Shown one piece after another: positions 22,431-63,673 of a DNA stretch of 64,000 bases (position 1 is the stretch's first letter; each line of letters opens with the position of its first letter). Location of the stretch: positions 1-64,000 of the forward strand of contig NIVC01003470.1 in the NCBI GenBank assembly GCA_002269645.1, written 5' to 3'. The DNA is from Macrostomum lignano. Taxonomy: Eukaryota. The translations under genes and the position numbers were made by a program. Under the pieces are notes generated by a model. That model was not told where the DNA came from. It saw only the letters and a list, made by a program, of their open reading frames with translations, and searched no databases.

Positions 22431-23029
22431 CCAATATACTGTTCTTTGCTTGATATGAATTTTGAAATGAAAATAAAGAATAAAATACAATTATTGTATG
22501 TTTTGATAAAGTATGAAGCCTTTTTAACTTATTTTAATGAGGATTCTAAAATTAAATAAAATTAAGGATTGTGAGAAAAAATGCCAGAAATTTTTTAATA
22601 TAAAATTTATTAACTAGTTTTTTAACACAGCCCTTGTTGGTTGCATTCATTGATGGCTGCCACCTTTTTCCTTTTAGTCTATCAATAGATCATATCAGAT
22701 ATGCAATATTTGTCTAATATAAGTTTAGCATAAATGACAAAATTTTATTTTGGTTAATTGCAATAGACAATTTATTTGTCAGTGCTAAATAATATTAAAT
22801 AGAGTTTTATCATAGCTATAGGCTATAGGAAGTTTTCGTATAGATGTTTTCTAGCAAAACATACATATACTGGTACAGATATATGGTTATAGGAACTTAT
22901 ACTTCACATATCTAGTTCCTATATCTAGTAATACCATTCAACTGAGAATGGAAAGACCATTGAATCTGTTGATTTGATAGGGTTAGGGTAGTAGAAATAA
23001 ATGAATATTGCCAGCTTCATCAAAGTGAA

Positions 23030-23590
23030 AAGAACTCTTAAGTCCCTGTAATTTAGGACTCAAATATCAACATAGATTGTCAATACCATCTCTATGCTAT
23101 AGTTGGGTAGTAGGAGCTAAAGTTAAGATGAATGTTTTCAGTTTCAAAGGGGAGCTCTTAAGTCTCTGCATGGATTTGGGGGCTTAGCAACAAAGCTTTA
23201 AAGCCACATGCACATTGTTGTTGTGTGGTAGGAGGCTAAAGTTAAGATGAATATTTTCAAAATCAATGTGAGGGTCAAAGGGAGCTTTTAAGTTCTTAGA
23301 ATTGGGAACTCAAGCACTAAAGACAGAAATGTTTGTCACTATATATATATTAAAGTTGAAATAGGAGGAGGGGGAGGGTTAAAGTTAAGATATGTTTTCA
23401 CTTTCAGTGAAAACTTTTTAGTATAAAAATTTTCAGTATAAATTTTTATTGAATTTTTTAAGTTTTTAGTTAATTTTTAATTTAGTCAAATTTTTAGTAT
23501 AGAGCTCTAAGTCCCTAGGGTCAAGAACTCAAACAACACATTTTTGACACTATATACACATTATGGTTGGGATAGTGAGGGCTTAAGTTA
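23030..23590. repeat. Old, diverged tandem repeat, about 4 units of 120-130 bp or more
   Basis: Recurring GAGCTCTTAAGTC...CTAAAGTTAAGATGAAT modules start near 23031, 23153, 23280 and 23503. Confidence 0.6.
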
Positions 23591-23726
23591 TGATGAATAA
23601 AGCCAATAGGGAAACCACTAGCATCTATCATCACTATCAAAGAAAGCTAGATTACAAAGAGGCTTCTTGGAAACCAATTGATAAGTAGGTAAGAATTGGT
23701 GATTTTGTTACTTTAGTTACCTAGAA

Positions 23727-23908
23727 AATATGAAAAAATGAGAGAAAGGAGAGAGGAAAGAGGGAGAAAGTAGTGAGAAGGGGAAGGAAGGGAGAGGAAT
23801 AGGGGAGATAGGAGAAAGAGGGAAAGAGAAGGTAAAAGAGGGCAGAAGAGAAGGGAAAGAAGAGAGGAGAGGAAATAGGGGATAGAAGAGAAGAGAGAGA
23901 AGAGAAGA
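23727..23908 (+). repeat. GA-rich polypurine tract
   Basis: Nearly all G and A on the + strand. Confidence 0.85.
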
Positions 23909-25762
23909 TATCATGTAATGGCTTTGGGCAATGGACCTCCAACTGGATGATGTGGCTAGCTAGTTGAAGTTGTTGCTTGCACAATAGGTCAGAAGGCTAC
24001 ATCAGGTGTACCCTTATATAGAACCTAGTATTGGTCTTACTGTTTAAACTGATGTGCATATCTAAATGCCACATATAGCATGGCTACATATATAGTGTCT
24101 AGCTATCTCTCTAAGGTATCTATAAAGGCCTATGTCTTGGCATTATACAATTGTTACAGAAAGTTTTCTAGCTATGGATATGTATATAGATATAGATAGG
24201 CTATGGAAAAATTTTCTAGATAAAGCAGATATAGGAAAATTTTGGTTACAACGGAACTCTAGTATTAAATAATGAAGATGCTTATATAAAAGATATTTGA
24301 TAACAAATTTCATAATTAAAAGAGTTCTTAACGCTTTGTTATGGTTTTTAATGAATTGGTGATAAGATAACCTAGCAATAATCAATGACAATAGTCATTC
24401 TGATAAGATGCAAATAAAACAAACAAAGCTTAGCTTAGCTTTTTCAATTTTTTAAACTTTTGTACTTATAGATATTTTTTGACTATATTCATTTATATAT
24501 ATATATAACTATATGCAAATATATTTATAGTTCTTTTAGTATATAATTTACAAATAGACTCCATCAAATGTATCTATTTAAACAATTGTATATATTTTTC
24601 CATTAAAAAATACTGGTAAAACTGGTAAAATATTTGAATGTTCATAGAAAATTCTACGATAATATATTTAATTAATATGCTATCAATATACTAGTGAACA
24701 AAAAAAGAGCTTATAAAAAGAAATCATATACTAATTTTTTCTGTAAAAATATTGTCTTGCATAAAGATTTTTGTCTTATAACAAATTATGCCACTTTTTT
24801 TATTTTGTGCTATATTGTGCTAGATTTTTTCCCCTTGCCTACTATTAGGCTACACCAGAATGCACTAGTGCAGTGCATGTTTAACCCCTTTTGCATTAGA
24901 ATTTTCTGTGAAAAGGCCATATTCTTGACTATGGACATCTATAATCAATAAAAAATATATATATTAAGGGTGGCCTATACAGCTATGATTCAATGATTAC
25001 AAAAATCTTAAATTTTTTCTTTGTTTATTAATGCATTTAATGTATTTTATAGTTTAATATAATAATAACTATAATTAATGAATTTTATAGTTTATAATTT
25101 ATATTTATAGTATAATACATTTAATTGTATAAGAGTTTTAAACTTTTTAGTTTAGACTATTTGTCTGCCAGCATGCTATATCCAATCCAATATACTAAAA
25201 ATGTTTTGTCGGTAATGTGTGTGATCGATTTTAGCAAATCCAATCTTCTATCTAAATCTATCTTCTAAATATACTAAATCTCTAATATTTGTTTGTTTGT
25301 ATGCTTGAATGTCCATAACGCTCTAGAGATTGCAATTCTTCACCGATTTTGATCGCGTTTTCGCCAAAAGATTCAAAATTGTCTGGAAAGAAGACAGTTA
25401 AAATTTCTTGTATCTGCTTCAATGCTAAAGGGATTAAATATTCAAAAAACAGTTTTAAATGGCCTTTTTCAATGCAAATTTTATCAGCCAGAAACTTCAC
25501 TGCCAATTTTAATTGATTGCGCCAGAGCCAACTGATAAGAAAACTCACTCCGCTCCACTTAAAGGGGGGCAATAAAAAAATTATTCTGGCTGCTGGCAGC
25601 TAGCTCTAATTAGTAAATATACTAAATTCCATCTATCCAATATACTAAAAATGGTCTGTCAGTATGTGTGTGATCGATTTTAGCAAATCCAATAGGCCTA
25701 TACTAAAAATAGTCTGTTGGTATGTGTGTGATCGATTTTAGCAAAAAGGGCTCAACCTATTT

Positions 25763-26075
25763 TTTTTGAACTTGCACTGTTTGATCAGAATTTTTTGCAT
25801 CTTGGTACATGCATTTTGGCTAAGAAATTGCTTGATGCTAAAGGGATTAAATATTTGAAAAACATGCTTTTTTGCAAAGGTCAAGCAAACTTTTCGACTT
25901 GAAATGCATTGTAAGAATGCTAGAGAAAAAACTGACTGGTTGAATTCTGATTCTGAAATAGATCACAATCATATCATCACAATAGGCTTTTTATTTATCG
26001 TCTATGTACTGGCTGAATTTTGACACTGAATTGAATTATGTCATAGTATTGAAAACATAGTGTGGAAGCATAGCA
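25763..26075 (+). repeat. Dispersed repeat copy 2 (partner of 22170-22430)
   Basis: Same conserved blocks as the copy at 22170-22430. Confidence 0.7.
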
Positions 26076-30890: not shown

Positions 30891-31802
30891 TCAATGCGAG
30901 GCAGCTGATTTATTCGCGTGCTGGGACCCTTGCTGCTGGGAAATTGGAGTCACTGACGCATCCGACGGTGCTGCTGACTGCGCACTTGCCTCAGAAGCCG
31001 AGGTCACAGGCGCTGCGGCGGTTGGCTGTTGCTGCGATGGAGGAACCGGTGGCTGCAGTTGTGGCTGCACCTGCGACGACGAAGCATGCGGTGGCAGCAT
31101 TTGATAAGCGATAGATGACTGTGGCGGCTGCTGCTGCGGTGTGAAAACAGTCGGTGCATATGGGGGCCTCATAATTTGCGCTGGTTGCTGTTGAAAATAC
31201 GCAGAATTTTCAGGCTGCTGCTGTTGTCTAGCAGCTGCAGCAGCGGCCGCAGCAGCAGCAGCTGCTGCAGCAGTTGATGATCCAGTGACATGACCAACAG
31301 AATTTTGGGCAGCACGAGGCGGCGGTGGCTGCTGTTGCAACATAGGCTGCTGTGGTCTCTGCATCATAGCTTGTGGTTGTTGCACCATAGCCTGCTGCAT
31401 AGCGACAGCTTGCTGCGGCTGTTGCTGCATTATGGCTGCCTGTGGTTGCTGCTGAATCATCATAGCCGGCTGTGATTGTTGCTGTGGCTGCATGATCATT
31501 GGCTGAGGTGTTGGCCCTGGAGCACGTAACACAGCGCCAGGGCCTTGCATTGGTGGCTGCATAGGTGTTTGAGCTGTTTGTTCAGATGCACTATTACTGT
31601 GTGAATCAGCAATGGTAGCTAGGTATACAAGGTTTCTGTGAAGTGTCTGCTGTAGAGTAGCCATCTCGTGAGTCCGACCACGCTGCTCATACTCCAGCAT
31701 GGCATTAATTAGTTGGGCATTTTCATCTAACAGTCGCTGAATTGTAGCTGTGTTGGGCGGCGCAGCCTTCCGTGCAGAGGGTGGTGAAAATGCAAGCGAC
31801 AT
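30891..31802 (-). CDS. ss18: SS18/SS18L1-like BAF subunit (SSXT/SNH domain plus Q/P/A-rich tail), single coding exon, 303 aa
   Basis: MSLAFSPP...IQRLLDENAQLINAMLEYEQRGRTHEMATLQQTLHRNLVYLATIADS matches the SS18 N-terminal SNH domain (MSVAF...IQKMLDDN..LI...HTNLVYLATIADS). The frame is open to the stop at 30891. Confidence 0.9.
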   Translation of the reverse strand: MSLAFSPPSARKAAPPNTATIQRLLDENAQLINAMLEYEQRGRTHEMATLQQTLHRNLVYLATIADSHSNSASEQTAQTPMQPPMQGPGAVLRAPGPTPQPMIMQPQQQSQPAMMIQQQPQAAIMQQQPQQAVAMQQAMVQQPQAMMQRPQQPMLQQQPPPPRAAQNSVGHVTGSSTAAAAAAAAAAAAAARQQQQPENSAYFQQQPAQIMRPPYAPTVFTPQQQPPQSSIAYQMLPPHASSSQVQPQLQPPVPPSQQQPTAAAPVTSASEASAQSAAPSDASVTPISQQQGSQHANKSAASH

Positions 31803-33361
31803 GACTAAAAAGCTGCTAGAATGGAAAAAATGAAAGTCAATGTTTGCTTTGTTTATGGGCAAAAGAGTGACTTGGTATGGTTTGGATTCTTATTATCATG
31901 CAGATCTAGATAAAGTAATGTAATGCTTTAGAAAAAAAGGTAAAATTTGAAATCTCCATTACTTTGGCTTAAAATTCAAGCCAAAGATTAAATACTTAGT
32001 AAACATTTTCAGCATGATTTCAGGAGGAGGTTTAAGACTTCCCAAGCCCCCTATGGCTATGCTATTGACAATATCAATTACTTGTATATCTTGATAAATG
32101 GTATTTATTAATATCATTCATACAATAATATATGCTGTAATTATGTACTATAACAAATATAATACTAGGGCCTACTATTTACAAATACCTATCTACCATT
32201 GAGCAGGATAAACTACAACTAACTTTGATCTGCATTCAATTTTAATTTCAATTATTTTTTTGGAATAATGTTTAGTGTATTGTAAAATTATTTGCACATC
32301 AAACTTTATATATTTTATTCTATGGCTTGCTTTTCCTATTACCCTAATTGCAAGATAAAATAGACAGTGGCTGTCTTGATATTTAATGAGTTGCACTAGA
32401 GAGACATAATATTTTTCTTGTGTGCATCAAGAAGATAGCCTCTGTATTTATTAGACACTTGCTTGTATGGCCCATAGTGGGGGTTTTTTATCATCTTTGT
32501 GAATTACTTATAATATAATGAATTATAATAATTTTCATATCTTGCCTTAGTGGAATGCATTCCTAAAGTCCACAGAATGCAATATGCCAAAACTGAATTG
32601 GAAATCTATATGCAGGAGCAAGTTTTGTTGAATGTCCTTATTATCTATGGTATGAAATAAATATCCAATTGCCAAAATTGAATGCTGCTTGCTGAAATTA
32701 AATGTCTTTGTCAAATTGAAATGACAGTTACATAGCTAAATATAGAATGATAACATTGAATATCAGCTTATTTATATTTATAGAAATTTTATTGAATATC
32801 AAATATAAGTATATATTAAATATTTACAAAATATATGTTTTTTTAAATTGAATAGAAAAATGTATACTATTGCATTAAGGCACAAGAACTTGTTATATAA
32901 ACTAGTATATTTTTTTAGGCCTAGGACTATTTAACTTACTTACTATGGGCCAAAAATACTTCAACTAGCAGTGCATTAAGTGCAACTCAATTTTATTTTA
33001 GCAGTATAGTTGTGTCTAATTTGTGAATGAATAACTAAATTAATTAACTTATAAATTATTGGCATAAGCCATGACAAAAGCCATGACTACCAATCCCTTA
33101 CCATTGCTCTGTTGCTTAATAAAAACAAAGTTGCTTCATTCTAAATCATAACATCATTTATTTTATTGATTGATTTAACCTTTTTGGCTTTTATATAAAT
33201 AGGACCCTTTTTAGCTTAGCTTTTTTGGAATACTTAAAAATATAAAAATCACTAACAATAAAAGAAAATAATTCAACAAATGGTTTTGAAGGATAATCAA
33301 TCTTGTGACAGCCTTAATTGACCACAATCTGCTAGCATAAACAGTTAGGCATGTATATTAT

Positions 33362-33740: not shown

Positions 33741-36700
33741 TCACCAAAAAAATTCTGGCGGGGCACGGGCCCTCTCACTTCGGCGCAATACAGGCTGTTC
33801 TGGATGCTCTGGAACATCAGCAGGGGCGCCGACCGGGGCGCCGATTGGGGCGCCGACCGGAGCGCCGGCTGGGGCGCCGGCTGGGGCGCCGGCTGGGTCG
33901 CCGGCTGGGTCGCCGGCTGGGGCGCCGCGGGCGCCGACTGGGGCGCCGACTGGGGCGCCGGCTGGGGCGCCGGCTGGGACGCCGTTAAATCTCAGGTCGT
34001 CCTCGTCAGGATTGTGCAGTTGCGCCGCTGGTTGCAATTGAGGTGCTGCAGCTGGACTGGCCGTGTTGCATGGCTTCAGGCGATTGAAATGCACCACCCT
34101 TCGCCGTCGTGCATTGGCCTCGTGCTGAATGCGGTAGGTGACGTCTGAGATCTGCTTTTTAACGCGCCATGGCCCAGTCCACCATCGATGAAATTTTCGG
34201 CTCTCGCCTCGCTTCAGCGCCGGATTGTGCAGCCATACCAGATCGTTCTCGCTGAATGCCTCGCCGTGGCACCTCCTGTCGTACGCTGCCTTCTGGTGCA
34301 GTTGCGCTGCCTCCAAGTTTTGTCGCGCCCTCTCGTGCGATGTCTGCAGCCGGCTCCGCAGCTCGGCCACCCATTCACAAGGACGTTGCCTATCCGGCGC
34401 CAGACCTCCGTATGCCAAGTCCAGTGGTAGTCGCAGTTCCCGGCCGAAATGCATCGCCGAAGGTGTCTGACCAGTCGACTTGTGGACTGAAGTGCGGTAG
34501 CCAATCAGTGCAATCTGCAGATGAAGATCCCAGTCTCGCTGATTCTCGTTCACCCATGCTCGCAGCAGCTGCACCAGTGTCCGGTTCATCCGTTCGCAAC
34601 CGCCGTCTCCTTCAGGGTGGTAGCCTGTCGTCCGAGTCTTGTCGATTTTCAGCAGCCGCATCGTCTCTTGAAACAGCTGTGACTCCCAGTTCCGACCCTG
34701 GTCGGTGTGCACCGACTGCGGGACTCCAAAGCGAGCCACCCACTCGTTGACAAACGTCCGGGCTGTGGTCTCAGCGTCTTGAGACGGCAGTGGAAAGGCC
34801 TCAGTCCACTTGCTGAAGGTGTCGATGACTACCAGGATGACTGAATTTCCACGATCGGTCCTCGGCAGGCCCACCATGAAGTCCATTTCCAGTCGCTGGC
34901 CAACGCTGCCGACCGCCATGCTCTGTAGAGGTGCCCGCCTGTGCTGGCCAGAATCTTTCAGTGTCGCGCATTCGAGGCACGCAGCACACCAGTCAGTCAC
35001 ATCTGCTGTCATTCCAGGCCAGTAGAGTCGCGCCCTGATCTTTTCAATGGTCTTCTGCGGTCCGCAGTGGCTGCCGCTCGTTCCAGCATGAGCTTCGACA
35101 AAAACATCGCGCTGTAGACTCTCTGGCACCAGCAGCTGCTGACAAAAGGCGCTGCCATCTTCGGATTCCCATCGGCGGCACAGCAGTCCGTTCACCAGTG
35201 TCAGCCGCTTAAACTCGGACAGCAGTTGCCGCTGCCGATTGCTCCAGCCGTCCGTCTCTGCCTTATCCGGTGGTTGCCCATCTCGCAAGCAGTTCGCCAG
35301 CTTCTGCATGCACCGATCTCTGCCTGTGCTCGTCGAATCGCGCTGTCGTCATTGAACTCGACAGCGAGCGCAGAGCCACTGCACAGGCAAGGTCCTTTTC
35401 GACACGGTCGCCGACTAAGTGCGTCTGCATTTCCATGTTTCTCGCCCTTGCGATACTCAGTCTGGTAGTCGAATTCGCTTAGCTTATCCAGCCACCGTGC
35501 CAGCTGACCATCGGGATCTCGAAAGCGCAGAAGATGGATCAGCGAGGCGTGATCAGTACGTAGTGTGAATCTTTTTCCTAACAAGTAGCTGCGATAGTGA
35601 CCGACGAAGTGCACAATTGCCAGCAGCTCACGCCTCGTTGTGCAGTAATTTCTCTCTGCTTTGGACAGAATGCGACTGCCGTACGCCACCACCTGCGTCC
35701 TGCCACCACGGCGCTCTTGAAGAACTCCGGAGATGGCCACGCCAGAGGCATCGGTATCTAGCACGAACTCAGCGTCTTCTGCGAATGTCGGCATGATGAG
35801 GACTGGGCTGGAAGTAAGGCACTGCTTTAGGCGATTAAATGCTGCTGAGCATTCGAGAGTCCAGCTGAAGGTCACGTCCTTTTGCGTTAGCTTGTACAGC
35901 GGTTCAGCAATCTCACTGTAGTTTTTAACGAAATGACGATAGTAGCCACATAACCCCAGGAATTGTCGCACTTCTGAACGATCTTCGGGCGTTGGCCACT
36001 CCTGCACTGCTTTCACCTTGTCCGGGTCAGTGGTCACGCCATCTTTTGAGATTCGAAAGCCAAGAAATGAGATCTCCTGATAGCACAAGTGGCACTTGGT
36101 CGGCTTCAACTTCAGGTTAGCGGTTCTGAATTTCTGCAACACAAGCTCAAGACGCCGCAGATGCTCCTCGAATCCTTTCGAAAAGATGACAACGTCGTCA
36201 AGAAATGACAGGCACACTTCCCATCGGAGGCCCTTCAGAACGAGTTCCATCAGCCTTGAAAACGTGGCAGGACCATTGCACACACCTTGCGGTAGTCTCT
36301 TGTACTGGAATAATCCTTGTGGCGCAGGAAATGCTGTTTTTGCGCGACTCTCTGAGTCCAGCATCACCTGGGTGTACCCGCTAGTGAAGTCGAGCGTTGA
36401 GAACATTGTGGATCCTGCGAGAGCATCGATCAGATCGCTGGTGTGAGGCAGTGGATGACTGTCTTTGACGGTCACGGAGTTGAGCAGTCTGAAGTCGTTC
36501 ACAGCGCAAACTGCCGTCCTTCTTCTTCACCAGAATGACCGGGCTCGACCACGGAGAATAGAAAGCTCTACGATGTCGTCTCTCACCATCTGCTCGACCA
36601 TCTCTGACACAGCTCGCTGGTTCGGCGGCGACAATCTACGAGGAGGCACTCTGATAGGTTTCGCCGACCCGGTGTCAATTTTGTGGTCAAGGAGTGAAGT

Positions 36701-37647
36701 GCAGCCCAGGTCGTTTGGACTTTTCGAGAACACATCCTGGTACTGATGCAGAAGATCTTTGACACACTGAACTTGATTGGCTGTAAGATTTTTCTCATCA
36801 ATGTGCACATTTGGTACATACTCGGCGATTTGACCTTTCACTGTCTCAACTTGCATTGACAACTCTGCATCGGCACCATCTGACATCGGCTCAAAAGTCC
36901 CCAGTCTTGTTCCGGGGTAAAATGTATGCGGCTTGGTGTCCGTATTGATATAGTGAACAGCGATGAGTCCTCCTCGCAACACCGAGGCTGCGCGCTCCAC
37001 ACATGACCGTGGAGATGTCCTTCGAATTGTCAGGCTCAAAAATACCGCACTCACCATCAACAGCTGCATCTGACTCACTTGCCAATCTCGCTGGGAAGAC
37101 GATTTCGTGACCAGCGGGCACGGTTGTCCTGTCTGCTACCTCAACGGCGAATACACAGGTGCTGGCTGCCGATGACTCCATTTTTACTTGCTGACCGCAC
37201 ACAGTGAGCGTTTGGCGATTGCAGTCGATGACGCAGCCACAGTTTGCCAGGAAATCTGCACCCAGCAAAAAAATCCTTGGCCAGATTGTCGACAACTAAA
37301 ACTCTTTGTCGAACCGTTGCCACACCGAAACTTAGCTGCACTTCCTGCCAACCACAGGCAGCCAAATAGTTACCGTCTGCCAGCTTCAACTGCACCGGAG
37401 TCGTCAAAGGCAGGAGCCTCTCATTCAGCTTGCGAAACAGGGAACTTGACATCAAAGACTGGGAACACCCAGTGTCAACTAGACAGCTGGCAGGGACACA
37501 CATTGGCAGGATGCGACAGTTTACCAGCATGTTGGCACCAGTGGCTGAGCAGGACACCTCTACGACTGGTTGCGCCGGGATTCTCACTTGCGGAACGGCA
37601 CCCCGGCGGTCGCCGCTCCATCGAAGTTTCCCGACTTCTGAGTGCAA
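33741..37647 (-). pseudogene. pol: Gypsy pol (protease, RT, RNase H, integrase), split by several frameshifts
   Basis: Protease LVDTGC; RT STLDFTSGY, LPQG and FLDD; RNase H TDASG...YCTTRRELLAIV...TDH...NADALSR; integrase HHCC, DDE core (MDF, HTDQG, GGCERMN) and GPW motif. The domains are spread over five ORF-track frames. Confidence 0.93.
33822..33980. repeat. 12-bp minisatellite (GGCGCCGGCTGG-like) encoding a PAGA-repeat tail of the integrase
   Basis: About 13 units in frame in ORF 33741-35309. Confidence 0.9.
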
Positions 37648-38425
37648 AATCTTTGAACATGGCCCGGCTTACCGCACTTCCAGCATGTCACAACTCTGCG
37701 TCTGTCGCCGCTCTGACGATGATCCTGGTCCTTTGACTCCCAGCGGCTGAGCTTGTTGTACAGCTCCTTCAGGGACCGTTGAATTCCGACTGCAAAGGCT
37801 TCGGGAACCTCAGCAGCTAGAGCCGTAGCAGTGCCTCCTTGCGACTGTATCGATTCCACGAATCGCGCTGTTTCAACTGTATCAGCGAATGTCGCCTTTG
37901 GCTGCATCTGCGTCTGCATTCGCACAGCTGGGTCCCTCAATCCGGATAGAAACCGACCTTTGAGAAGCTCGTCCTTCGCTGTCACCGACGTCTCCTGCTC
38001 GGCACCTGCTTTCGTCTCCATCAGACTCGGGAACGCACGCTTTGCCGCAACGATCAGGGCATCGGAATAGTCTGCAACCGACTGACCGTCCTTTTGAGTC
38101 AGATTGAAGAACTGCGCCTGCAGCTCAGCAGAGGATGTTGATGGCCGAAATCGATTTTTCAGAGCCTTCTCAAAGTCGTCGTAGGACAGGGCAGCATCCA
38201 AATTGCTGGCCGCTTGATATGATTTGTCGTCGAGGAATGACAGCAGAGCATTCTTGCGCTGATCCACAGGAAGAGATGATGCGAAATTGTTGAATCGTGC
38301 CAGCAAAGTTCAAAGTCTTGTCCATGCTGGTATTGAGGCGGCCGCAAAAACATGTTTACAAAACTAGCTTGGGGCTGAGTCACCGCCACTGTAGGGCTCT
38401 CTGCACTGCCTTCATTTTCAGTCAT
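37584..38425 (-). pseudogene. gag: Gypsy gag with a zinc knuckle; one frameshift near 38305
   Basis: ATG at 38425 (MTENEGS...). The reading QDFEL[W]LARFNNF needs one extra base. CWKCGKPGHVQRFC is present. Confidence 0.88.
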
Positions 38426-42054: not shown

Positions 42055-43914
42055 ATGGCAGGCGCATATCCATGTGTGGTCTGTCTGCAGCCAGTTTGCG
42101 ATGGACAAGAAGCAATTGAGTGTTCTCAATGCTTGAATTGGCAGCACCGTGCATGTGACAGTCGCGTCACGATCAATCAGTATTCTGCAATGAGAAATGT
42201 TGGTGAGTTTTTCTGGCTTTGCAATCAATGCAATAGACGGGCTCCTGCAGGTAACTTAGCAGTGTCTCAAGCTGCAGATGCTGCAGTGGTACATGTACAA
42301 GCCCCGAATTCTGGACCAGCGGCTGTTCCTCTGCCTGCTGAAAATCCAGAACCAGTGCATTTGATTCTGGCACAAGCAGAAAATTTTCTTTACCAGTATC
42401 CAGATTTCAATGACCCTGATCCAGCTCTGGAAGAATCCATTCAAATTCCTCCAGCAGAGCTTGCACCACCCCGCAGCCCACCTCCCCAGCCCTTTGAGAT
42501 TCTTACAGGTGCAGGATGCAGTCACGGAAAAGACCTTCTAGTGCAGTATGCCCAACGAGACCTTGGCCATCTGATGGATGAAAAAACGCGGCGAAATGGC
42601 AACATATACTATCGCTGCACTAAGCATTTATCACTGCACTTTCATGGCTCCGCAGTCTGCCGTGCTGATGGAACCATACAAGCCCTTGCTCCGCACACGT
42701 GCGATCCAGTTGATCGGCCAGCTCAGAAGAGAAAGGCAGCAAAGGAGGTAAAGGAGGGAGCAAAGCGCATGTTGTTTACCTCTGCTAGAATTATCGCGGA
42801 GGAGAAGGTAAGAGAATTTTCACCTGAAGTGCAGGAGGTGCTTAGTATTGAGTCATTGAGTCGTAATGCTAATTACAGTCGCAAAAAAGATCGCCCTATG
42901 GAACCTGTTGACGTACATTTCCAAGTTGATCCTAGACATGTACCTGCCCAGTTTCATTTGCAGGATGTGACAGTTCCTGAGACAAACAGGCGACACTTCG
43001 TCTTCATGACAACAACTCAGCGAGAACTGTTATCAACCCGACGAATCTTGAAGTGCGACGAAACTTTTAGCATTGTCAAGGCACCTTTCAAACAGCTTTA
43101 CAGTGTACACGGCGCAATTTGCTTTGATGGGCAAGAAAGGCTGGTACCACTTGCCTTCTTTTTGATGTCCGGTAAGGCTCAAGCTGATTATCAAGCCTGC
43201 TTTCGTTGCCTTTGGGAGTCAACAGATAATGCGCCAATCAAGTTCACCTGTGACTTTGAAGCTGCTGCTTGGCAAGCAATTCGGCTGGTATATCCAGGTG
43301 CGCAAGTTTGCGGCTGCTTCTTCCATTATTGTCAAGCTGTCTTCAGGCATGTCCAAAATCTTGGCCTTCAGGTGCAGTATTCCACTGTTCCAGCAGTTAA
43401 GTTGGTTGTACGCATGCTTCTCTTGATTCCATGCTTGCCATCCACTTGTATGCTTGATGGTCTGGCAGCCTGCATTCAACTGGCAATAGGTAATGAGCTA
43501 CTCCTACAGCTAGCCGAGTATGTGCGCACTACCTGGCTGCAGCATCTTGTCTGGGACCGTGATGCTATCTGCATCTTCGAGCAGTACAAGAGGACCAACA
43601 ACGACGTAGAAGCCTGGCATGGTCAACTCAACAAGCGTGGACAGAAGCCGCTGAACTTCTACCTTCTGCTGGACCTGCTACAGCGTGATGCTGAACGGGT
43701 GCGACGGCTACAGCAGCAAGTTCACAGGGGCCAGGTTGTTACTCATCACCAGCAGGTGCATGCCAGGTACGCACGAGTGAATGCTGCCTTCGAGACGCAT
43801 TGCAAACATCTTAGAGAAAGTACACTTTCAATTGCGGCCTTTCTAAGGGCCTGCAGCCATCTGCACACTCAGCCTGTCTGGCAGGTACAGCAGCCTGCAG
43901 ATGAGGAGGCTTAA
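42055..43914 (+). CDS. MULE transposase with an N-terminal PHD finger and a FLYWCH-like zinc finger, 619 aa
   Basis: PHD pattern C2C..C2C..H2C..C2C at residues 7-59. FLYWCH-like LLV...YYRC...HTC. MULE core CDETF (DGTF-like), QLYSVH, PLAFFLM, DFE.A...A, GCFFHYCQAV, RTNNDVEAWH. Confidence 0.92.
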   Translation: MAGAYPCVVCLQPVCDGQEAIECSQCLNWQHRACDSRVTINQYSAMRNVGEFFWLCNQCNRRAPAGNLAVSQAADAAVVHVQAPNSGPAAVPLPAENPEPVHLILAQAENFLYQYPDFNDPDPALEESIQIPPAELAPPRSPPPQPFEILTGAGCSHGKDLLVQYAQRDLGHLMDEKTRRNGNIYYRCTKHLSLHFHGSAVCRADGTIQALAPHTCDPVDRPAQKRKAAKEVKEGAKRMLFTSARIIAEEKVREFSPEVQEVLSIESLSRNANYSRKKDRPMEPVDVHFQVDPRHVPAQFHLQDVTVPETNRRHFVFMTTTQRELLSTRRILKCDETFSIVKAPFKQLYSVHGAICFDGQERLVPLAFFLMSGKAQADYQACFRCLWESTDNAPIKFTCDFEAAAWQAIRLVYPGAQVCGCFFHYCQAVFRHVQNLGLQVQYSTVPAVKLVVRMLLLIPCLPSTCMLDGLAACIQLAIGNELLLQLAEYVRTTWLQHLVWDRDAICIFEQYKRTNNDVEAWHGQLNKRGQKPLNFYLLLDLLQRDAERVRRLQQQVHRGQVVTHHQQVHARYARVNAAFETHCKHLRESTLSIAAFLRACSHLHTQPVWQVQQPADEEA

Positions 43915-55804: not shown

Positions 55805-57263
55805 TACCATCACTAAAGCAAAATCAATTGCTTTCCTACTATAAGAAACGTTGATAGGCAAAAGCATTGACATTTTATATTTGTATACAAATTGCAAATT
55901 ATAATATATAGCTTTATTTACAACCCAGTAGGGGGCGACCCAGTCCCAGGGCCCGGGCCCGACCCTAAAAAAGTCGGGAAATTGGGACAAGTCTTTTTTC
56001 CCTAAATCAGGATCAGGACAGCACAAGCACAACACTCAGTTAAGCATCAAATCAGCACTCAAGACTCAAGCACTGCACGACTGCAGTAACAGTAATAGAT
56101 GATATGATGTGAAGTAGCAATATCATTGATTCATAGTAGGCTCTTAGCGTGAGCGTTCGTGAGCATCAGCCACAGCCAGTTTCCACTTTCCAGAAAGATC
56201 GGATTTTTTTCCAGGAAGATAAAATTTAAACATAGTTTTGCAATACTTTTTTGCAATTTTGATTCCACTATACATGCTGTAGGCTGCAGCCTAAAAGCAA
56301 AAATATGATTCTTTAAAAAGTTGATTTGTCATTTTTAAGCTTTTGTAAATAAAATTTCCTATTTAAATTCCAAGAAGTACCTACCAAGGACCAAGACTAC
56401 CATTTTTCCAAGAAGTTTGCTATCTATCAGAGTTTGTAATTGTGTTTGTATTTGTATCATAGTTGTAGTCATAGACTCATAGTATCGTATTTATAATCAT
56501 ATTCATATAGGTAGGTAGGTGAACAGGTAGGCAGGTATCAGCTAATTACTTGTATTTCCAGTCTGTTTGCCTGTTCTGTTGAGTGTTGTATAACTTGTTG
56601 TGTTGTCACTTCACTTGTGTTCTGTTCTGTTGTCTTGTCTTGTTGTCATACTGAATACTGACTGTGTACATGGCTCTTTACATTGAAGCTATGTAAAGGA
56701 ACTAAAAATTCAAATAAAAGAACCAATTGATTTGGTTCTTACTTCCTTACTGCTTCCAATGCCAAGTGCCTTACACTTAATGCTTCAGCTTTTCTTCTTT
56801 TTGCTTACTGCCACTGCCAGTGCCAGTGCCAGCTGCACTGCTGCAGTGCCTGCTTGCCTACCTCACTGCCTGTCACTATCACTGGCACACACACACACAC
56901 ACATAGTAATTGTGCCACACAGTGACATTGAATTTGAACTATTGAGTATATTGATATTTGAGTATTAAGTCTTGTCTATTCATAAGTCTTAATTAATGTA
57001 TTAAATAATAATAATATTTATTATATTTAATATATTATATTATATTTAATATGTTTATATATTATAATATATTTGAATTTATTATATATATATTACATAT
57101 TGCATATGCAAAAAGTTGCTAAGAAGCTTCTTACTTAATACTTATGCAACGAGTAGCTACTTTTGACTATAGTTTGGAATATACTTCCTATCCATTAAGC
57201 AATACTTCCTGTGTATTGATATTTGCTTTTCTTTAGCTTGTCTCTGCACCTTTCTGCTTGTCA

Positions 57264-59962
57264 ATGTATCATCAACAGTCTCAGCAGTTTTTTGCACCTG
57301 GTACGTCCACTGGAGCTGGCATCTCAGCTGTTAGTGGTCCAATGGATGCAGCGGCACAGTTCTTTTCTGGACAGCACTCGCCATCCCAGTCGACAGGCCA
57401 GCTAGGTAATGTGCCTGCAATCGGAGAGTACTTTATGTACAACTGGGTAGTCATGGATGGGACTAATCAGGCAGTAACCGGCGTTCATTTCGACAAGTAC
57501 GAGGACTTGCTGTGGTGTGTTAACTGCGGCGGCCATCTTACAGGTTACTATGGACCGCAGCTCAGCAAGTATGTGTCGCTTCACGTCCAGAAAGATTTGC
57601 GACAGGTGTGTGCTGCTAGTCCTCTTGCTGAGGCTGGCGTCTTCACAATGGCAAAGTGAGAACTCTTTTGAAGTATATGTCATCTGATAAATTGCTGTAT
57701 AATGTAGTTAGTAAGTTTGCACGTCTAGTTTAAAACGTGCTTGATTTAAGGAACTTAAGGAGCATATCAGCTACCAATTCAGTTGGTAACTATGTTAAGT
57801 AATGTCAAAAATATTAAACTTAACTTGAAGTGCCGTTTTTCATATAGCCAGATGTCATTAAGTTGTCACTATGGTCACTAAGCATCTTTAATTATTAATT
57901 TGAATATGTTTTTGCTTATTAACACTAGCGACTACTGATACGTTCGTGCTCAAGCTTAATAAGCTCAGGCAATTTTTTGTTGCATAGTACATTCTTTGCG
58001 TCTCATAAAACCCTAAGAAAAAGGACTTGCAGTTATAAGAATTATATTAAGTCCCTGTTAGGACTAACGGATAACTCACGGTAGACAAGAAGTCATAAGC
58101 TACTATTGCAGTTTTTATACTTCGTATCGGTGTAGTGAGTGGGGAGCAGTGGAAAACACGCTAAGGGTAGAGTATGACGAATGAAATTCCTGACTAGAAA
58201 AATTCAGAGGGCAGAGAGCTTGGGAATTCTATCGAATATTCTATATATATTGACATCCTGCAGATCAGGAGTCGCCTGTTACTCAAAGTTTGGACAGCGT
58301 CGTTGGTCATATTCATGTCCTGGAATGACCGTTGATTTAGCAGCCATGATTCACGACCCAGAGGCCGGGCGGCTGACCTTAGGTGGCCGGCAGGATCGTG
58401 TGTTGCAGTTGGATACTGGCACTGGCCGCTTAGTTAAGTGTGTCGACATGGGACCAGATGGTTGCGAATTTCTAAGGCACAATGGTCGATTTATCTGCGC
58501 TGCGAGTGCCAAGGGCACAGTTACTCTACTGGATAGAGGAACGGGACGAAAAGAGCACAGCCTCAGCACAGTTACCGGGCAGCTTGCTGATGTAGCAGTG
58601 CAGGATAGCCTGCTGGTCACTTGCGGCTGGTCAGTACGGCATGATGGAAATGTTATACCTGATCGCCTTCTGCAGGTAAAGTGCACTGTAGTCCTAAAAT
58701 AAGAGCCGATACAACTGCTCACATATCCTTGTCATTTTTAAGGCTAGTTATTACTTTTTGCTCTAGGCCTTTGATCTGCGAGTTTTGCGCCCAGTTCAGC
58801 CGTTCTGTGTCCAACTGGATCCACACTTTGTCCGCTTCCTACCGGCAATGCATGACCGACTGTTAGTTGGCAATTCGCTTGGCGAATTCCAGTTCCTTCA
58901 ACTGGGTCAGTCTATGCCATCATCGCCTGTCTACCAACTGGGAGTTGGTGCTACTGATATAGATATTAGTGCTAGCTCACGGTGCATCGCTGTCGGCGAC
59001 GGGGCCGGGGGTGTCTACCTGCTGAGCGCCGACACTGCTGACGTCATCGGACCGCGTTTTAATGTCTCTCCGTTGCCGACTGTATTTCCAGACGATCCGG
59101 TTTATTCTCCTAATCCTATTGCACTTGGCAACGAGTCTTTTTTCTTCACAAGGTCAGTATATAGCAATGTTTAAACGGATATTTTTTTCTATTTGCTCAC
59201 AATAAGCCTTCTTGATACTGTATCAAAATTTGTAATGCTAGTACGCTAGTATAACTGATAAATTTACATCTCAGTTACTATGATTCGGCATAACAGATAA
59301 TAGTATTCTTTTGTAATAAAAAACTACGAATAAAATTTGCCTGTCCTTTTTTATCAACAGGGTGCTCGCACTATTGATTAGGCTAGATTTGCAGCAATAA
59401 ATTGTACTTCCTGCTATTACTGCATCCTGAGGCGAGTGCTTGCACTTCTCACCATTGGTATCTGGTATAGTTTTTGCAGCAAGTCAAAGATGCTTGCAGC
59501 AGCCAAAGCACCAATTCGTAAATTAAATCTGTAGAGTTCCTGACGAAAGGATTTCTGTTTACATAATTTTTCCTAATGTTGGCTGTATTTTCTTAATTTC
59601 ACAGCATGCCATTTGGATACCCGAAAGAGTCCGATGCCAGCTCCGCCGGATCTGGGTATCGGTGCGCCCTTACCAGCGATTGGGCGCCTCGCCTCTGCCA
59701 TTCATACGAGAGACGGGTGAAGCTCATTGATGAGGCAATTATTAGTGGCGCTTCTACAACCCGTGGCCTTGCCATAGCCCGCAAGCCCGCTGGCTGGGGC
59801 AGGACCCACTTTCCTTACTACAGTCTGACAGAGCTTTCTGAGTTGGTCGAGCAGTCAGCAGCTAAATGCCAGTCGCTGAACAATGCCTGTGACATCACCT
59901 CAGGTTCTGCAAGTATTGCGGAGAAGGTCTCCACATTGGAAGCTGATGTTGGAAAAAATTGA
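57264..59962 (+). CDS. pan2: PAN2-like protein: WD40 domain and linker only, 4 exons, about 515 aa; UCH and DEDD nuclease domains not found
   Basis: Exons 57264-57655, 58264-58675, 58767-59152 and 59605-59962, all GT-AG with consistent phases (1548 nt). VHFDKYEDLLW...GGHLTGYYGPQL, LVTCGWS, AFDLR..P, DISAS...AVGD and TSDW align colinearly with the N-terminal part of PAN2 as I recall it. Confidence 0.85.
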
Positions 59963-61794
59963 TATTCCGAGTTTGATATTAAACTAAATAGTCAATTAAA
60001 ACTTTAGCTCCTGCTATCTTAGATGATTTTAAACTTCGAAAGTATCCCAGTTTTTTTGAAGACAGGAATGTTTAGTCATATAGTCTGGTTTCCTACCAAT
60101 CTCTAATGCCACTCTTGAATCACGCGAATATCACATCTTGCTTGGTGTCTTATTCTTTTTGTGCAGACCAAAGGCTTGCAACATTCAAGCGAAACACTGC
60201 GCTGTGGCAATAGCAAAAGCCAGTTTTTCAATCTAGTCTTACTGATTTCAAAATAACTTGGCATCTCGAGTCCATCTTGGGATGGCCTCGTCTCATTTAT
60301 TGTACCACAGGAAGGCTAAGAGAAAACGTTATTCGATGTTGCGTTAATGCACGTTATTGCTGTCAATATATACCGTACTACGACCCGGTAGCATATGGGT
60401 GGATATCGTCTATGGCAACTCAGCCCATGAAATCTTGTTAGTGAACCGCTTTGCTGTCTGCCAAGCTTGTTTGACTGCACCCGTACTTGTCATTATTGCT
60501 TCAAAGGTGCTCCAAAAATGAGCAAAATGACAAAATGTTCCTGTCGATCCGTTTTCACCCTTTTTCAAAATTTTGTTTCATTTTCTGTTGTAGTTTAAAT
60601 AAACCTAATGCATTACTCTTCTTCAACAGATGTTACTTTATGCAGCTACTTATTTGCCTTTGTCTGTATTGCATAGAATTGGCTTTGGCGCAAACGTATC
60701 AAAAACTTGCATGCACGTCTATAAAAAGTTAGCAATGTGTGCGGCTTAATTTTCAAAATGAAGGTAGCGAAAAACGGCCGGGCGTTGAAATATTCCGTTT
60801 GTTGGAGCCTGGCCGGTCATTGTAGCCGCTTTGCCTGCAAGCTCATTTCGGCCAATCGCTCACTTCGCCGCCCAATACAAGCGTATAGCTCATAACTCGT
60901 AACTGTCATTCACTTTTCCACTCATTTCAGAGGTTAATTTGGCAGATTTTTTCACAAGCACAGTGCAAGTACTGGCTATTTCTATTACATTAATTGCATT
61001 TCCCATCCCGCGGGGGGGGCGTAGCTTAGTTGTCTAGCGTGGCGCTTTTATGTACCAGCGGCTCAGTCTCGATTTACAGTGGTCACATTAATTTAGGGCT
61101 AAATTGGAATCTTGATTGGCTCTGCTCGTGCAATTAACGCCTTTGAAGGCCAATCCCAAGGTACAGTGACTGCTACAGTACCTCCCCAAAGATAATAAAG
61201 TTGCCCGCTGTGCACTCCTGTGTGTGTGCCTGTATGTATGACTACGTATCCGAGCGCTTGTGTGCCTGCTCGGGCGAGTCGGCAGAAAAAGCAGTAATGC
61301 CTCAATGTGTGACAATGCGCTGAGCCCGAGCTCTTACTCCTGAGTTTTTGCTCACTTTATTCATACGGCCCATGTCTCCTAAGAGCGCCAGAGTGCGCAA
61401 ACCCTTCTACCTCTAATCTTGAGAAATTCCCATCCTGCATGTTTCGCTACAGGTAGAAAAACAGGATTTTGAGCACACTTTTCGATAAACTACTTAACTT
61501 TTGCATCTAGCACATTAGGTTGTATTGTTTATAATGTAATTTGTCTATTATACCTGGTCGAGAATTGTTTAAACTTCGAAACCTTGAAGCTCTATTCAAA
61601 AACCGAAACTCAAGTTTCCACAGTGCTATTCTAGTCTTGAATTTGCATTATTTTTGGGTACGCATCATAGTGGTCTCTTAGTTGGGAATTTGTTTCCTTA
61701 TCCAAGAAAGAAAAGAAAGTATAGTTAAAACATCCTTTACATTACTAAATGCTTGGTAATATTCTGAATTTTCCAGCACTTTCTGGCCTTTAAA

Positions 61795-63673
61795 ATGTCT
61801 GCTGAACAAGAGGCTCGATTGCAACGGATCAAGTCGGCCTTAGTAGACTATCCGGACTTTCCAAAACCTGGCATTGTCTTCAAGTGAGTCTTGATACTAA
61901 ATCCCTTTATTTTTCGATCGTCGATCGCGCTGGTATCATTGCGTCTTCTTGTGACGAGTAATTCTGATATGCTGGTTGTCTTACCACGAGACATCTTCAG
62001 GGTTCGTTTAACTTCCAAGCAGTGGAGCTGAGCATCAACTCAGTTGTGAGAAGTCCTTGAGTGTATCTTCCGTTGTCGTTCTTTGTGAACATTGACTAAT
62101 TTGACTATTGATTTTGATTAAACTGGACTAGGTTGAACTGACCTTAGAGCTTGTGTTTTTGATAATAAATAATTCTATTGTATTTAATATATCTGGTTGT
62201 GTTTGTGATAAATGAGCCGTAAAGATGTCGAAACGCGTGACGTGTGACAACAAAATGCGTTGACTTTTACAATTAGCTAGTCTGTGTTTAAAATTCCTTT
62301 CTTTTTCTTTCTTCTTACAACGAGCAACCCTTGCACAATCTTACCATGACGAACCGCAACTACTGCAAGTGAATAAACCTGATTTCATAATAAGATTTTC
62401 CCGGCATTATTTGCGTTCTCCGGGATTTCATTTGGCAACATTCAATAATATCCCGTAAAATATTGTCTATGTTTTATCAGGCCCTCGTGATTTATACAAA
62501 TAGCTCCCTCAAAAGGCATGTGTAATCTCGTATAAACCATAGACATAAAGACTTTACGGGATATTATTGAATATTACCAAATAAAATCCCGGAGAACGCA
62601 AATATTGTCACGGAAAGTCTTTATTTCTATGGATTATAAGCAAGTAATAGATTGTATCCAGGAATTGCCAATTTTTTATTACCTTCAAACAAATTTGTAG
62701 AGATATTATGGGAATTCTGGCATCGCCGTCTATCTTTGCTGATACAATCGATTCTATGGTCGATATTGCCAAGGTACATGCTTACTTCTATTTTTCCTCG
62801 ATATTTTCCACTATCATTGTAATTCTTACGCTCCTATGACACTGATTAAAGTAGCTCTAAAAATTGCTTGATCTAAGACTGACTAGGCGTACGTATGGGC
62901 GGCATGTAGAAGACTTTCATTAATATAACAGTCACTGTCAGCTTATACGCTCGTGCTGTGGAACGTTTAAAGAATTGCTTGGCTGCCAAGTAATTTTGAT
63001 GCAAATCAGCTTTCGCGCATAAAATGAGCCATCGAATCACGTAAAGGATGTACAAAATTGGCAAAAGGATGTGATTACACAATATTGGCTTCATTTGATT
63101 TCGATCTTCAGACTATGAGGGTTATTCCAGAAGTCCTCAGTATTTGTTTGTAGCATGTGGTGCCACTAATCACAGAGCGATCAAAATCGAGTGCAGGTTT
63201 TCCAAATAATTGAAAGATCTAGAAACTGCTCATTTTTATCTTGTTGATAATTGATTCCCATACTGCTTCCTGAGTTGCAGGGCTTGCCTCAGGTGGATCT
63301 TGTCGTTGGTCTAGAGTCGCGCGGCTTTTTGTTTGGACCCTGCATTGCCCAGCGCCTTGGTGTCGGCTTCGCACCGATCCGTAAGGCTGGAAAACTACCC
63401 GGTCGAGTTGAATCTGAGAGCTATACCAAGGAGTACGGGCAGGATCGCTTCGAAATCCAGGCGAATGCAGTTCCACCCGGTGCCCAAGTCATGCTGGTTG
63501 ACGACCTAGTAGCTCTAGGCGGCACCATGGCTGCTGCTGTTCGCCTTATCCAGCGGGTTGGTGGCAATGTCACTGGCTGCTTGGTCGTGGTTGAACTCTC
63601 TTTTCTTAACGGCCGCGCTCGACTACCCGAGGGAACGCTGCTTAAGTCGTTAGTTTGCATCGACTCAGAATAG
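61795..63673 (+). CDS. aprt: Adenine phosphoribosyltransferase, 3 exons, 184 aa
   Basis: Exons 61795-61883 (MSAEQ...YPDFPKPGIVFK), 62701-62773 (DIMGILA...) and 63281-63673 (GLESRGF, IRKAGKLPG, YTKEYGQD, PRPP motif VMLVDDLVALGGT). GT-AG introns with consistent phases. Confidence 0.96.

What the first reader, a model, noticed from the sequence alone, without database searches (positions are those of the whole stretch)
57264..61790. PAN2-like gene apparently lacking both the UCH-like and the deadenylase domains
Four clean exons encode the WD40 propeller and the following linker, then diverge and stop at 59960-59962, just before canonical PAN2 enters its pseudo-UCH and DEDD nuclease domains. I found no UCH-like exon in 59963-61794; all three frames after the acceptor near 60168 close quickly. 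APRT follows on the same strand. The WD40 and linker are the parts of PAN2 that bind PAN3 (established). An expressed WD40-plus-linker protein could therefore be a catalytically dead PAN3 partner or decoy, or half of a split PAN2 gene. The reading frame and splice sites look intact, not decayed.
Basis: partly seen in the sequence, partly recalled or inferred. Interest (0 to 1): 0.7.

Follow-up and report, generated by a model that had tools for sequence, protein, structure and literature searches.

The report
Flatworm PAN2 without its nuclease half
This flatworm gene encodes only the front half of PAN2, the part that docks onto PAN3, and lacks the half that trims mRNA poly(A) tails; a tapeworm and a fluke carry the same shortened gene, so it looks like an old, maintained flatworm feature and not an assembly error.

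Summary
The window is Macrostomum lignano contig NIVC01003470.1. Exons 57264-57655, 58264-58675, 58767-59152 and 59605-59962 encode 515 aa. This matches the transcript-based GenBank model PAA51285.1.

The protein is a PAN2-type WD40 propeller plus the PAN3-interacting linker (PID). It stops about 47 aa after the last conserved linker motif. No UCH-like or DEDD exonuclease coding sequence was found in contig positions 1-69,962 or in the two paralogous loci.

The gene is not decayed. Between the two subgenome copies the CDS has 8 substitutions (6 synonymous, 2 not; dN/dS about 0.1). Introns and spacers differ by 2.6-2.8%.

The same WD40+PID-only architecture, ending at the same place, occurs in Echinococcus granulosus, Calicophoron daubneyi and an unidentified transcript. 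The truncation is therefore probably ancient in flatworms.

Best reading: a free-standing, nuclease-free subunit that docks on PAN3. PAN3 binding is inferred, not shown.

That test decides between a lost nuclease and a split gene.

The parts
57264..57655 (+). Exon 1 (CDS). ATG at 57264-57266 is the first ATG after the in-frame TAG at 57234-57236. Encodes a disordered Q/S-rich N-terminus (aa 1-55) and the first propeller strands. Donor GTGAGA.
58264..58675 (+). Exon 2 (CDS), middle blades of the PAN2-type WD40 propeller. Acceptor CAG, donor GTAAAG.
   Evidence: 105 bits to PAN2 profile positions 79-229
58767..59152 (+). Exon 3 (CDS), last propeller blades (propeller ends near 59027) and the start of the linker. 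Acceptor TAG, donor GTCAGT.
   Evidence: (68.5 bits, profile positions 230-350)
59605..59962 (+). Exon 4 (CDS). Carries the rest of the PAN3-interacting linker up to the motif TSDWAPRLC...RKPAGWGRTHFPY (ends at 59818). A 47-aa lineage-specific tail follows (59819-59959), then TGA at 59960-59962.
57426..59027 (+). Region encoding the seven-bladed PAN2-type WD40 propeller (aa about 55-355; spans introns 1 and 2).
   Evidence: AlphaFold2 pLDDT about 90 over this span. Top Foldseek hits are PAN2 WD40 structures 9qtu_C, 4d0k_A, 4czv_A and 4czy_A, at E 1e-22 to 2e-28. Generic WD40 proteins score about 1e-15.
59028..59818 (+). [quoted passage not shown] Disordered in the isolated model.
59978..60000 (+). 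Two ATTAAA poly(A)-signal variants (59978-59983 and 59995-60000), 16 and 33 nt after the stop. Likely 3' end of the mRNA.
   Evidence: sequence only; use not shown

Best explanation
This is the Macrostomum lignano copy of a flatworm-type PAN2. It is a free-standing protein made of the PAN2 WD40 propeller plus the PAN3-interacting linker (PID), and nothing else.

Shown:
- The gene is intact and its GenBank model is transcript-based.
- It is present in three nearly identical loci and is under purifying selection.
- It ends just before the point where canonical PAN2 starts its pseudo-UCH domain.
- A cestode and a trematode have the same architecture ending at the same place.

Inferred:
- The product docks one-to-one on the asymmetric PAN3 dimer through its PID and propeller, as the equivalent fungal construct does.
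- It thereby sits on PABP-coated poly(A) tails.
- It cannot itself remove adenosines, because it has no DEDD exonuclease.

My commitment: the nuclease half was lost in the flatworm stem. PAN2N-PAN3 then survives as a non-catalytic poly(A)-RNP adaptor, and deadenylation is left to CCR4-NOT. I put about 0.45 on this, against about 0.35 for a nuclease supplied in trans from a separate gene.
For: - Architecture: only PAN2_N is found. There is no UCH_1 or RNase_T in the protein or in about 70 kb of contig.
- Fold: a confident propeller whose best structural matches are PAN2 WD40 domains.
- Orthology: the listed hits are dominated by PAN2 proteins (one multi-repeat WD40 exception, P0135), and every one I named is PAN2 or a PAN2 N-terminal-domain protein.
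- Expression: the Mlig_3_7 GenBank annotation was built only from RNA-seq and transcript assemblies, with experimental trans-splice and poly(A) sites. Its CDS equals my model.
- Selection: window versus homeolog L002 shows 6 synonymous and 2 non-synonymous changes in 1548 nt (binomial p 0.0036). Exons differ by 0.5%, introns and spacers by 2.6-2.8% (Fisher p 5e-8).
- Conservation of the truncation: E. granulosus P0051 (582 aa), C. daubneyi P0021 (629 aa) and transcript P0016 (440 aa, TGA directly after ...WGPVWYPY) have PAN2_N only. They stop 0-37 aa after the same motif.
- In E. granulosus a convergent AP-mu gene starts 250 bp after the stop. No UCH/Exo coding sequence lies within 10 kb.
- PAN3 binding: C. 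thermophilum Pan2 WD40-PID (1-458) pulls down Pan3, while UCH-Exo alone does not (PMC4158885).
Against: - PAN3 binding is not tested. The linker matches the PAN2 profile only weakly (13 bits, E 0.004) and is modelled as disordered.
- I could not establish that M. lignano has PAN3.
- I could not search any flatworm genome or proteome for a separate UCH-Exo gene. Loss of the nuclease is therefore a preference, not a result.
- The parasite gene models are computational predictions.
- The grouping of the M. lignano protein with the parasite proteins in a neighbour-joining tree has only 34% bootstrap support.
Confidence: 0.6

Rival explanations
1. Split gene. An ancestral PAN2 was broken at the PID/UCH boundary. 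The UCH-Exo module is encoded by a separate gene elsewhere in flatworm genomes, possibly expressed via spliced-leader trans-splicing. It still works with PAN2N-PAN3 as a three-polypeptide deadenylase.
For: - The break lies exactly at a domain boundary.
- Gene fissions usually keep both halves.
- M. lignano trans-splices a large share of its mRNAs, which makes expressing a 3' half easy.
- Nothing I ran excludes such a gene outside the 70 kb examined.
Against: - In C. thermophilum, UCH-Exo without the PID does not bind Pan3, and isolated Pan2 does not bind RNA and deadenylates poorly (PMC4158885).
- The residues after the ...PY motif are not conserved among flatworms, so no new docking element is visible.
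- No UCH/Exo sequence lies near the gene in M. lignano, E. granulosus or C. daubneyi.
Confidence: 0.3
2. Dominant-negative 'decoy'. A normal full-length PAN2 exists elsewhere in the genome, and this short paralogue competes with it for PAN3.
For: WD40-PID alone is sufficient to occupy the single PAN2 site on a PAN3 dimer.
Against: - The word-index search with the M. lignano protein found only its own cluster. All four cluster members are short.
- In the exhaustive HMMER search, every sequence that clusters with the flatworm proteins is 629 aa or shorter.
- The short form is the one conserved in cestode and trematode, with conserved upstream synteny (PAXNEB) between those two. This is what an orthologue looks like, not a young paralogue.
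Confidence: 0.05
3. Artefact or dying gene: an assembly break, a mis-annotated fragment of a longer gene spliced over APRT, or a pseudogene.
For: - One of the three copies (L003) has a 1-bp deletion in a G5 run that shifts the frame.
- The GenBank CDS is flagged 'partial'.
Against: - Three loci have identical structure and the same stop.
- The annotation is transcript-based.
- dN/dS is about 0.1.
- The same end point is seen in three other flatworm-type sequences, one of them a contig with an in-frame stop and 137 nt of trailing sequence.
- Downstream lie APRT, with its own 5' leader exon, and then a minus-strand retrotransposon.
- The 'partial' flag concerns the 5' end only.
Confidence: 0.05

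Closest known systems
Canonical PAN2 (PAN2-PAN3 deadenylase catalytic subunit; e.g. human PAN2 in PDB 9qtu, yeast Pan2 in 6r5k, cuttlefish P0005/P0154)
   Same: Orthologous N-terminal WD40 propeller (30-36% identity, PAN2_N E 2e-36). Also shares the linker motifs LSDWP...LC and ...PY that precede the UCH domain.
   Different: Lacks the entire pseudo-UCH domain (PF13423) and the DEDD exonuclease (PF00929), about 700-800 residues. It therefore cannot be the catalytic subunit.
Engineered fungal constructs Pan2 WD40-PID / WD40-CS1 (C. thermophilum 1-458, PDB 4d0k; N. crassa, PDB 4czy)
   Same: The same domain content and almost the same end point. These constructs bind the PAN3 pseudokinase/C-terminal dimer.
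   Different: Those are laboratory truncations of a full-length gene. Here the truncation is the natural gene product, with a 47-aa lineage-specific tail.
Database entries 'PAN2 N-terminal domain-containing protein' of parasitic flatworms (Calicophoron daubneyi CAL8085272.1, 629 aa; Echinococcus granulosus s.s. protein on CM038615.1, 582 aa)
   Same: PAN2_N only. The same linker motif SDWP..LC...VD...(R/Q)KP..(W/M)G....PY, with the stop 31-35 aa later. They group with the M. lignano protein in a neighbour-joining tree.
   Different: About 30% identity. They carry long insertions in the linker, non-homologous tails and different gene neighbours (PAXNEB upstream in the parasites, none called in M. 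lignano). They are automatic annotations, and I found no paper describing them.

Membership tests
PAN2 (catalytic subunit of the PAN2-PAN3 deadenylase) | N-terminal PAN2-type seven-bladed WD40 propeller (Pfam PF20770) | tested here: met
   PF20770 E 2e-36. AlphaFold2 propeller with pLDDT about 90. Best Foldseek hits are PAN2 WD40 structures.
PAN2 (catalytic subunit of the PAN2-PAN3 deadenylase) | Linker / PAN3-interacting domain between WD40 and UCH | tested here: inconclusive
   Weak profile match (13 bits, E 0.004; profile positions 363-435). Motif-level conservation of SDW(P/A)..LC and ...PY. Binding to PAN3 cannot be tested with these tools.
PAN2 (catalytic subunit of the PAN2-PAN3 deadenylase) | Pseudo-UCH domain (PF13423 UCH_1) | tested here: not met
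   Absent from the protein. Also absent from all six frames of the window, contig positions up to 69,962, and loci L002/L003.
PAN2 (catalytic subunit of the PAN2-PAN3 deadenylase) | C-terminal DEDD (RNase T-type) exonuclease with catalytic D/E residues | tested here: not met
   No PF00929 match. No tblastn or profile hit. The marginal hits at 37.4 kb lie inside a Gypsy-type retrotransposon.
PAN2 (catalytic subunit of the PAN2-PAN3 deadenylase) | Orthology: closest relatives are PAN2 proteins | tested here: met
   Exhaustive HMMER search gave 450 hits. Every hit I named was PAN2 or a PAN2 N-terminal-domain protein.
Flatworm WD40-PID-only PAN2 ('PAN2N'; group proposed here) | PAN2_N is the only PAN2 domain (no UCH_1 or RNase_T), and the protein ends within about 50 residues of the ...PY linker motif | tested here: met
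   Residues after the PY motif: M. lignano 47, C. daubneyi 37, E. granulosus 35, transcript P0016 0.
Flatworm WD40-PID-only PAN2 ('PAN2N'; group proposed here) | Forms a clade with the other short flatworm proteins | tested here: inconclusive
   They group together in the neighbour-joining tree, but bootstrap support is only 34%. Long branches.
Processed or decaying pseudogene | Disrupted frame and neutral substitution pattern | tested here: not met
   The ORF is intact in the window and in L002. dN/dS is about 0.1. Exons are 5-fold less diverged than introns. Only L003 carries a 1-bp homopolymer deletion.

The most novel reading that the evidence does not exclude
Flatworms as a group (at least Macrostomorpha, Cestoda and Trematoda) have discarded the PAN2 nuclease altogether. 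They have kept, under selection for hundreds of millions of years, a nuclease-free PAN2N-PAN3 complex. If so, the WD40-PID/PAN3 module has a function on poly(A)-PABP RNPs that is independent of deadenylation.
Probability: 0.4. Interest if true: 0.75.

Novelty: new variant of a known kind. Interest (0 to 1): 0.6.

Why it matters
PAN2-PAN3 is treated as a universal eukaryotic deadenylase whose purpose is the PAN2 exonuclease. Here a natural, conserved and selectively maintained PAN2 consists only of the PAN3-docking half.

There are two possible outcomes:
- The complex has a nuclease-independent role, such as poly(A)-RNP recognition, scaffolding or miRNA/GW182-linked functions. That role could be studied cleanly in an animal where the nuclease is absent.
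- A deadenylase can work with its catalytic module as a separate polypeptide.

Either outcome is informative for the mechanism of mRNA decay. M. lignano has transgenesis and RNAi, so both are testable. It also warns annotators that 'PAN2' hits in flatworms should not be read as 'catalytic subunit present'.

Tried and rejected
1. Finding the missing half nearby. tblastn with 60 full-length PAN2 proteins found nothing in the window, the 6 kb beyond it, or the two paralogous loci. A full-length PAN2 profile (--max) found nothing there either, nor in the E. granulosus and C. daubneyi loci. The weak hits at 37.4 kb are in a Gypsy-type element.

2. Finding the missing half elsewhere in M. lignano.
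- A profile of 47 full-length PAN2 proteins was searched against the 5.8-billion-protein set. Only the best 120 of 489 hits are listed, all ordinary animals, none a flatworm.
- A flatworm-only profile returned nothing useful because the word filter was saturated.

3. Literature and supplementary tables. I found no mention of PAN2 or PAN3 in Macrostomum or other flatworm papers, or in six supplements searched. The Schmidtea genome paper is not held.

4. RNA genes in the spacer. No tRNA and no Rfam family anywhere in the window. A tRNA-looking stretch near 61,010 is not one.

5. Full-length candidate P0011 (1309 aa, Logan run SRR31412041) was considered as a possible Macrostomum paralogue. Its cluster has no NCBI member, so it is unlikely to be from M. 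lignano. Its origin is unresolved.

6. The first Biopython bootstrap run timed out and was redone with a faster distance routine.
Full report
**Origin of the window**

The exon model gives a protein that is 100% identical to GenBank PAA51285.1. That entry is 'hypothetical protein BOX15_Mlig003889g1, partial' from Macrostomum lignano. The gene lies at 57258-59962 of contig NIVC01003470.1 (96,258 bp) of assembly GCA_002269645.1. Window coordinates therefore equal contig coordinates.

**The observation**

- Exons 57264-57655, 58264-58675, 58767-59152 and 59605-59962 have canonical GT/AG borders. They join into one 1548-nt frame of 515 aa ending in TGA at 59960-59962.
- The GenBank CDS is the same, plus two residues upstream of the ATG. 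Its 'partial' flag concerns the 5' end only.
- The M. lignano annotation was built only from RNA-seq and transcript assemblies. Gene ends were set from experimentally mapped spliced-leader and poly(A) sites (PMC5730564). This model therefore represents an expressed mRNA.
- Two ATTAAA signals lie 16 and 33 nt after the stop.

**What the protein is**

- Pfam finds only PAN2_N (aa 69-353, E 2e-36). The best PDB sequence match is human PAN2 (E 1e-37).
- An exhaustive HMMER search of 1.84 billion cluster representatives gave 450 hits. Every hit I named was PAN2 or a PAN2 N-terminal-domain protein.
- The best hit is a cuttlefish PAN2 (36% identity). It aligns from query 57-471 to target 47-445, and the target's UCH_1 domain starts at 501.
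- An AlphaFold2 model built on a 30-sequence alignment gives a confident propeller (P0001 residues about 55-360, pLDDT about 90). The N-terminus and everything after residue 380 are disordered.
- By Foldseek the best matches are the four PAN2 WD40 structures (E 2e-28 to 1e-22, target-normalised TM 0.71-0.84). They are well separated from generic WD40 proteins at about 1e-15.
- In the alignment, the M. lignano segment TSDWAPRLC...IDEAII...RKPAGWGRTHFPY corresponds to the canonical LLSDWP..LC...PIDPEIL...GYAPNP....RNQ.PY. This is the last conserved block of the linker. About 25-30 variable residues later, canonical proteins begin the UCH domain (PK.YRK...KYSKLG.EDFDF).
- The M. lignano protein instead has 47 unrelated residues and stops.

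**Is the catalytic half nearby?**

No.

- tblastn with 60 full-length PAN2 proteins found nothing beyond the four exons. A profile built from 47 full-length PAN2 proteins, run with all filters off against every stop-to-stop frame, gave the same result. Only profile positions 21-435 were hit.
- The targets were the window, contig positions 64,001-69,962, and both paralogous loci.
- Marginal hits at 37.4 kb fall inside a Gypsy-type LTR element.
- Downstream of the stop lies about 1 kb of spacer. Next comes what the paralogues' annotation treats as a short APRT leader exon (window about 60947-60965), followed by an intron.
- The APRT coding exons are 61795-61883, 62701-62773 and 63281-63673. They encode 184 aa, and the best PDB hits are all adenine phosphoribosyltransferases.
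- Beyond APRT lies a minus-strand non-LTR retrotransposon.

**Is it decaying?**

No.

- The assembly holds two more copies. L002 is on contig NIVC01004594.1 (517 aa model). L003 is on NIVC01001148.1 (355 aa model). Both are followed by APRT.
- L002 and L003 are about 99.7% identical to each other across this gene region (98.2-99.4% over the longer flanking blocks) and about 97.4% identical to the window. This fits the duplicated karyotype of the sequenced DV1 line.
- Window versus L002: the CDS has 8 substitutions in 1548 nt. Six are synonymous and two are not (A31P, H429R).
- Introns have 30 substitutions in 1148 nt (2.6%) and the post-stop spacer has 51 in 1832 nt (2.8%), plus indels.
- This gives dN about 0.0017, dS about 0.016 and a ratio of about 0.1. 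The binomial p is 0.0036 against neutrality. Exon versus non-coding gives Fisher p 5e-8.
- The stop codon and the tail are intact in all copies.
- L003 has a 1-bp deletion in a G5 run (window equivalent 59007). This is either an assembly error or real decay of a third copy.

**The key extension**

Naming more HMMER hits showed that P0021 is a 629-aa 'PAN2 N-terminal domain-containing protein' of the trematode Calicophoron daubneyi.

Searching my hit set with P0021 picked out a small group: P0051 (582 aa), P0053 (418 aa), P0071 (328 aa) and P0016 (440 aa). All are short. For the four I scanned, PAN2_N is the only PAN2 domain; P0071 was not scanned.

- P0051 lies on chromosome CM038615.1 of GCA_021556725.1. 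That assembly is the Echinococcus granulosus s.s. reference (PMC12077126).
- In E. granulosus the 3.3-kb gene has PAXNEB upstream. A convergent AP-mu adaptin gene begins 250 bp after its stop. C. daubneyi also has PAXNEB upstream.
- Neither locus contains UCH or exonuclease coding sequence within 10 kb downstream.
- P0016 comes from a 1484-nt Logan contig (run SRR21676451, organism unknown). Its ORF ends with TGA directly after ...RKPANWGPVWYPY, followed by 137 nt of trailing sequence.
- All of these share the linker motif SDWP..LC...VD...(R/Q)KP..(W/M)G....PY with M. lignano. They stop 0-37 residues after it, and their tails are unrelated to one another.
- In a neighbour-joining tree of the propeller the six sequences group together, with M. 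lignano basal. Bootstrap support is weak (34%).
- Molluscs, a nemertean, arthropods, deuterostomes and cnidarians in the same searches have full-length PAN2.

The most economical reading is a single truncation at the PID/UCH boundary before macrostomids and neodermatans diverged. The conserved part ends at ...PY and the tails have drifted freely since.

**Mechanism**

- Wolf et al. showed that C. thermophilum Pan2 WD40-PID (1-458) binds the Pan3 pseudokinase/C-terminal dimer.
- They also showed that UCH-Exo (459-1170) alone does not bind Pan3.
- The PID wraps around the asymmetric Pan3 dimer with 1:2 stoichiometry and nanomolar affinity.
- Isolated Pan2 does not bind RNA (PMC4158885).

The flatworm protein is a natural equivalent of that WD40-PID construct. 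I infer that it docks on PAN3 and, through PAN3, on poly(A)/PABP. It certainly has no nuclease of its own.

I could not determine whether a nuclease is supplied from a separate gene. The profile search that could have shown a flatworm UCH-Exo protein lists only its top 120 hits, none of them a flatworm.

I lean towards loss, for three reasons:
- A detached UCH-Exo neither binds Pan3 nor binds RNA in the fungal system.
- No conserved new docking element follows the ...PY motif.
- The flatworm propellers score much lower against PAN2_N than the full-length proteins I scanned: 90-126 bits against 184-318. This fits relaxed constraint on surfaces that once faced the catalytic module, although flatworm proteins evolve fast in general.

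A split gene remains a serious rival. Spliced-leader trans-splicing, which is widespread in M. lignano, would make the 3' half easy to express.

**Comparison with what is known**

The protein is an orthologue of PAN2 by its propeller and linker. It fails two defining features of the PAN2 catalytic subunit, the pseudo-UCH domain and the DEDD exonuclease. It should not be filed as 'PAN2 catalytic subunit'.

The short parasite proteins already sit in public databases under automatic names. I found no paper that mentions PAN2 or PAN3 in flatworms.

I rate it a new variant of a known kind. It is of real interest to the mRNA-decay field if the nuclease proves absent, and still instructive if the gene is split.

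Noticed in passing
window 33741-38306 (- strand): Gypsy-type LTR retrotransposon with long open gag, protease, reverse-transcriptase/RNase H and integrase ORFs (522, 433, 183, 168 and 240 aa). It accounts for the 53-57% GC block at 34-38 kb.
   Followed up: partly
window 42055-43914 (+): 619-aa intact ORF with a MULE transposase domain (PF10551, E 4e-12). Probably a Mutator-like DNA transposon.
   Followed up: partly
window 4231-4797 (-), 13089-14276 (-), 30891-31862 (-): Long exons of three other genes: a Wnt-family ligand (PF00110, E 2e-21), an SH3-domain protein, and an SSXT/SS18-like protein (PF05030, E 2e-25).
   Followed up: partly
window about 60947-60965 and 61776: In the two paralogous loci the annotated APRT CDS starts in a mini-exon (...CACAAGCACAG|GTGTAAGT) equivalent to window about 60947-60965. 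In the window the annotated APRT CDS starts directly after the acceptor ...ttttccag at 61776. So about 0.85 kb of the 'intergenic' space is an APRT 5' intron.
   Followed up: partly
L001 17900-22400 (contig about 65.2-69.6 kb, - strand), beyond the window: Non-LTR retrotransposon (endonuclease, reverse transcriptase, RNase H-like ORFs of 362, 292, 251 and 206 aa) just downstream of APRT. The flank is 99% identical in all three paralogous loci, so the element was probably inserted before the duplication.
   Followed up: partly
L003 about 11763 (window equivalent 59007): The third copy of the gene has a 1-bp deletion in a G5 run in exon 3 that shifts the frame. GenBank therefore calls only 355 aa. 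It is either an assembly error in a homopolymer or true decay of a redundant copy.
   Followed up: partly
window intron 3 (59153-59604) and the APRT region: The homeologous loci carry a 245-bp insertion in PAN2N intron 3 relative to the window. The three loci also differ by 95-250 bp of indels in the APRT region.
   Followed up: no
L004 and L005: In both Calicophoron daubneyi and Echinococcus granulosus the short PAN2 gene sits directly downstream of a PAXNEB (ELP4) gene. This synteny is conserved between trematode and cestode. No gene is called within 10 kb upstream in M. lignano.
   Followed up: no
window 1-2000 and 22000-26000: The first 2 kb has a strong strand bias (GC skew -0.24, AT skew +0.36), suggesting a simple or satellite repeat. 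The 22-26 kb stretch is very AT-rich (28-32% GC).
   Followed up: no
window 56860-57100: Directly upstream of the gene: CTGCC/CAGTG-rich repeats, a (CA)8 run and a 130-bp stretch made only of A and T.
   Followed up: no
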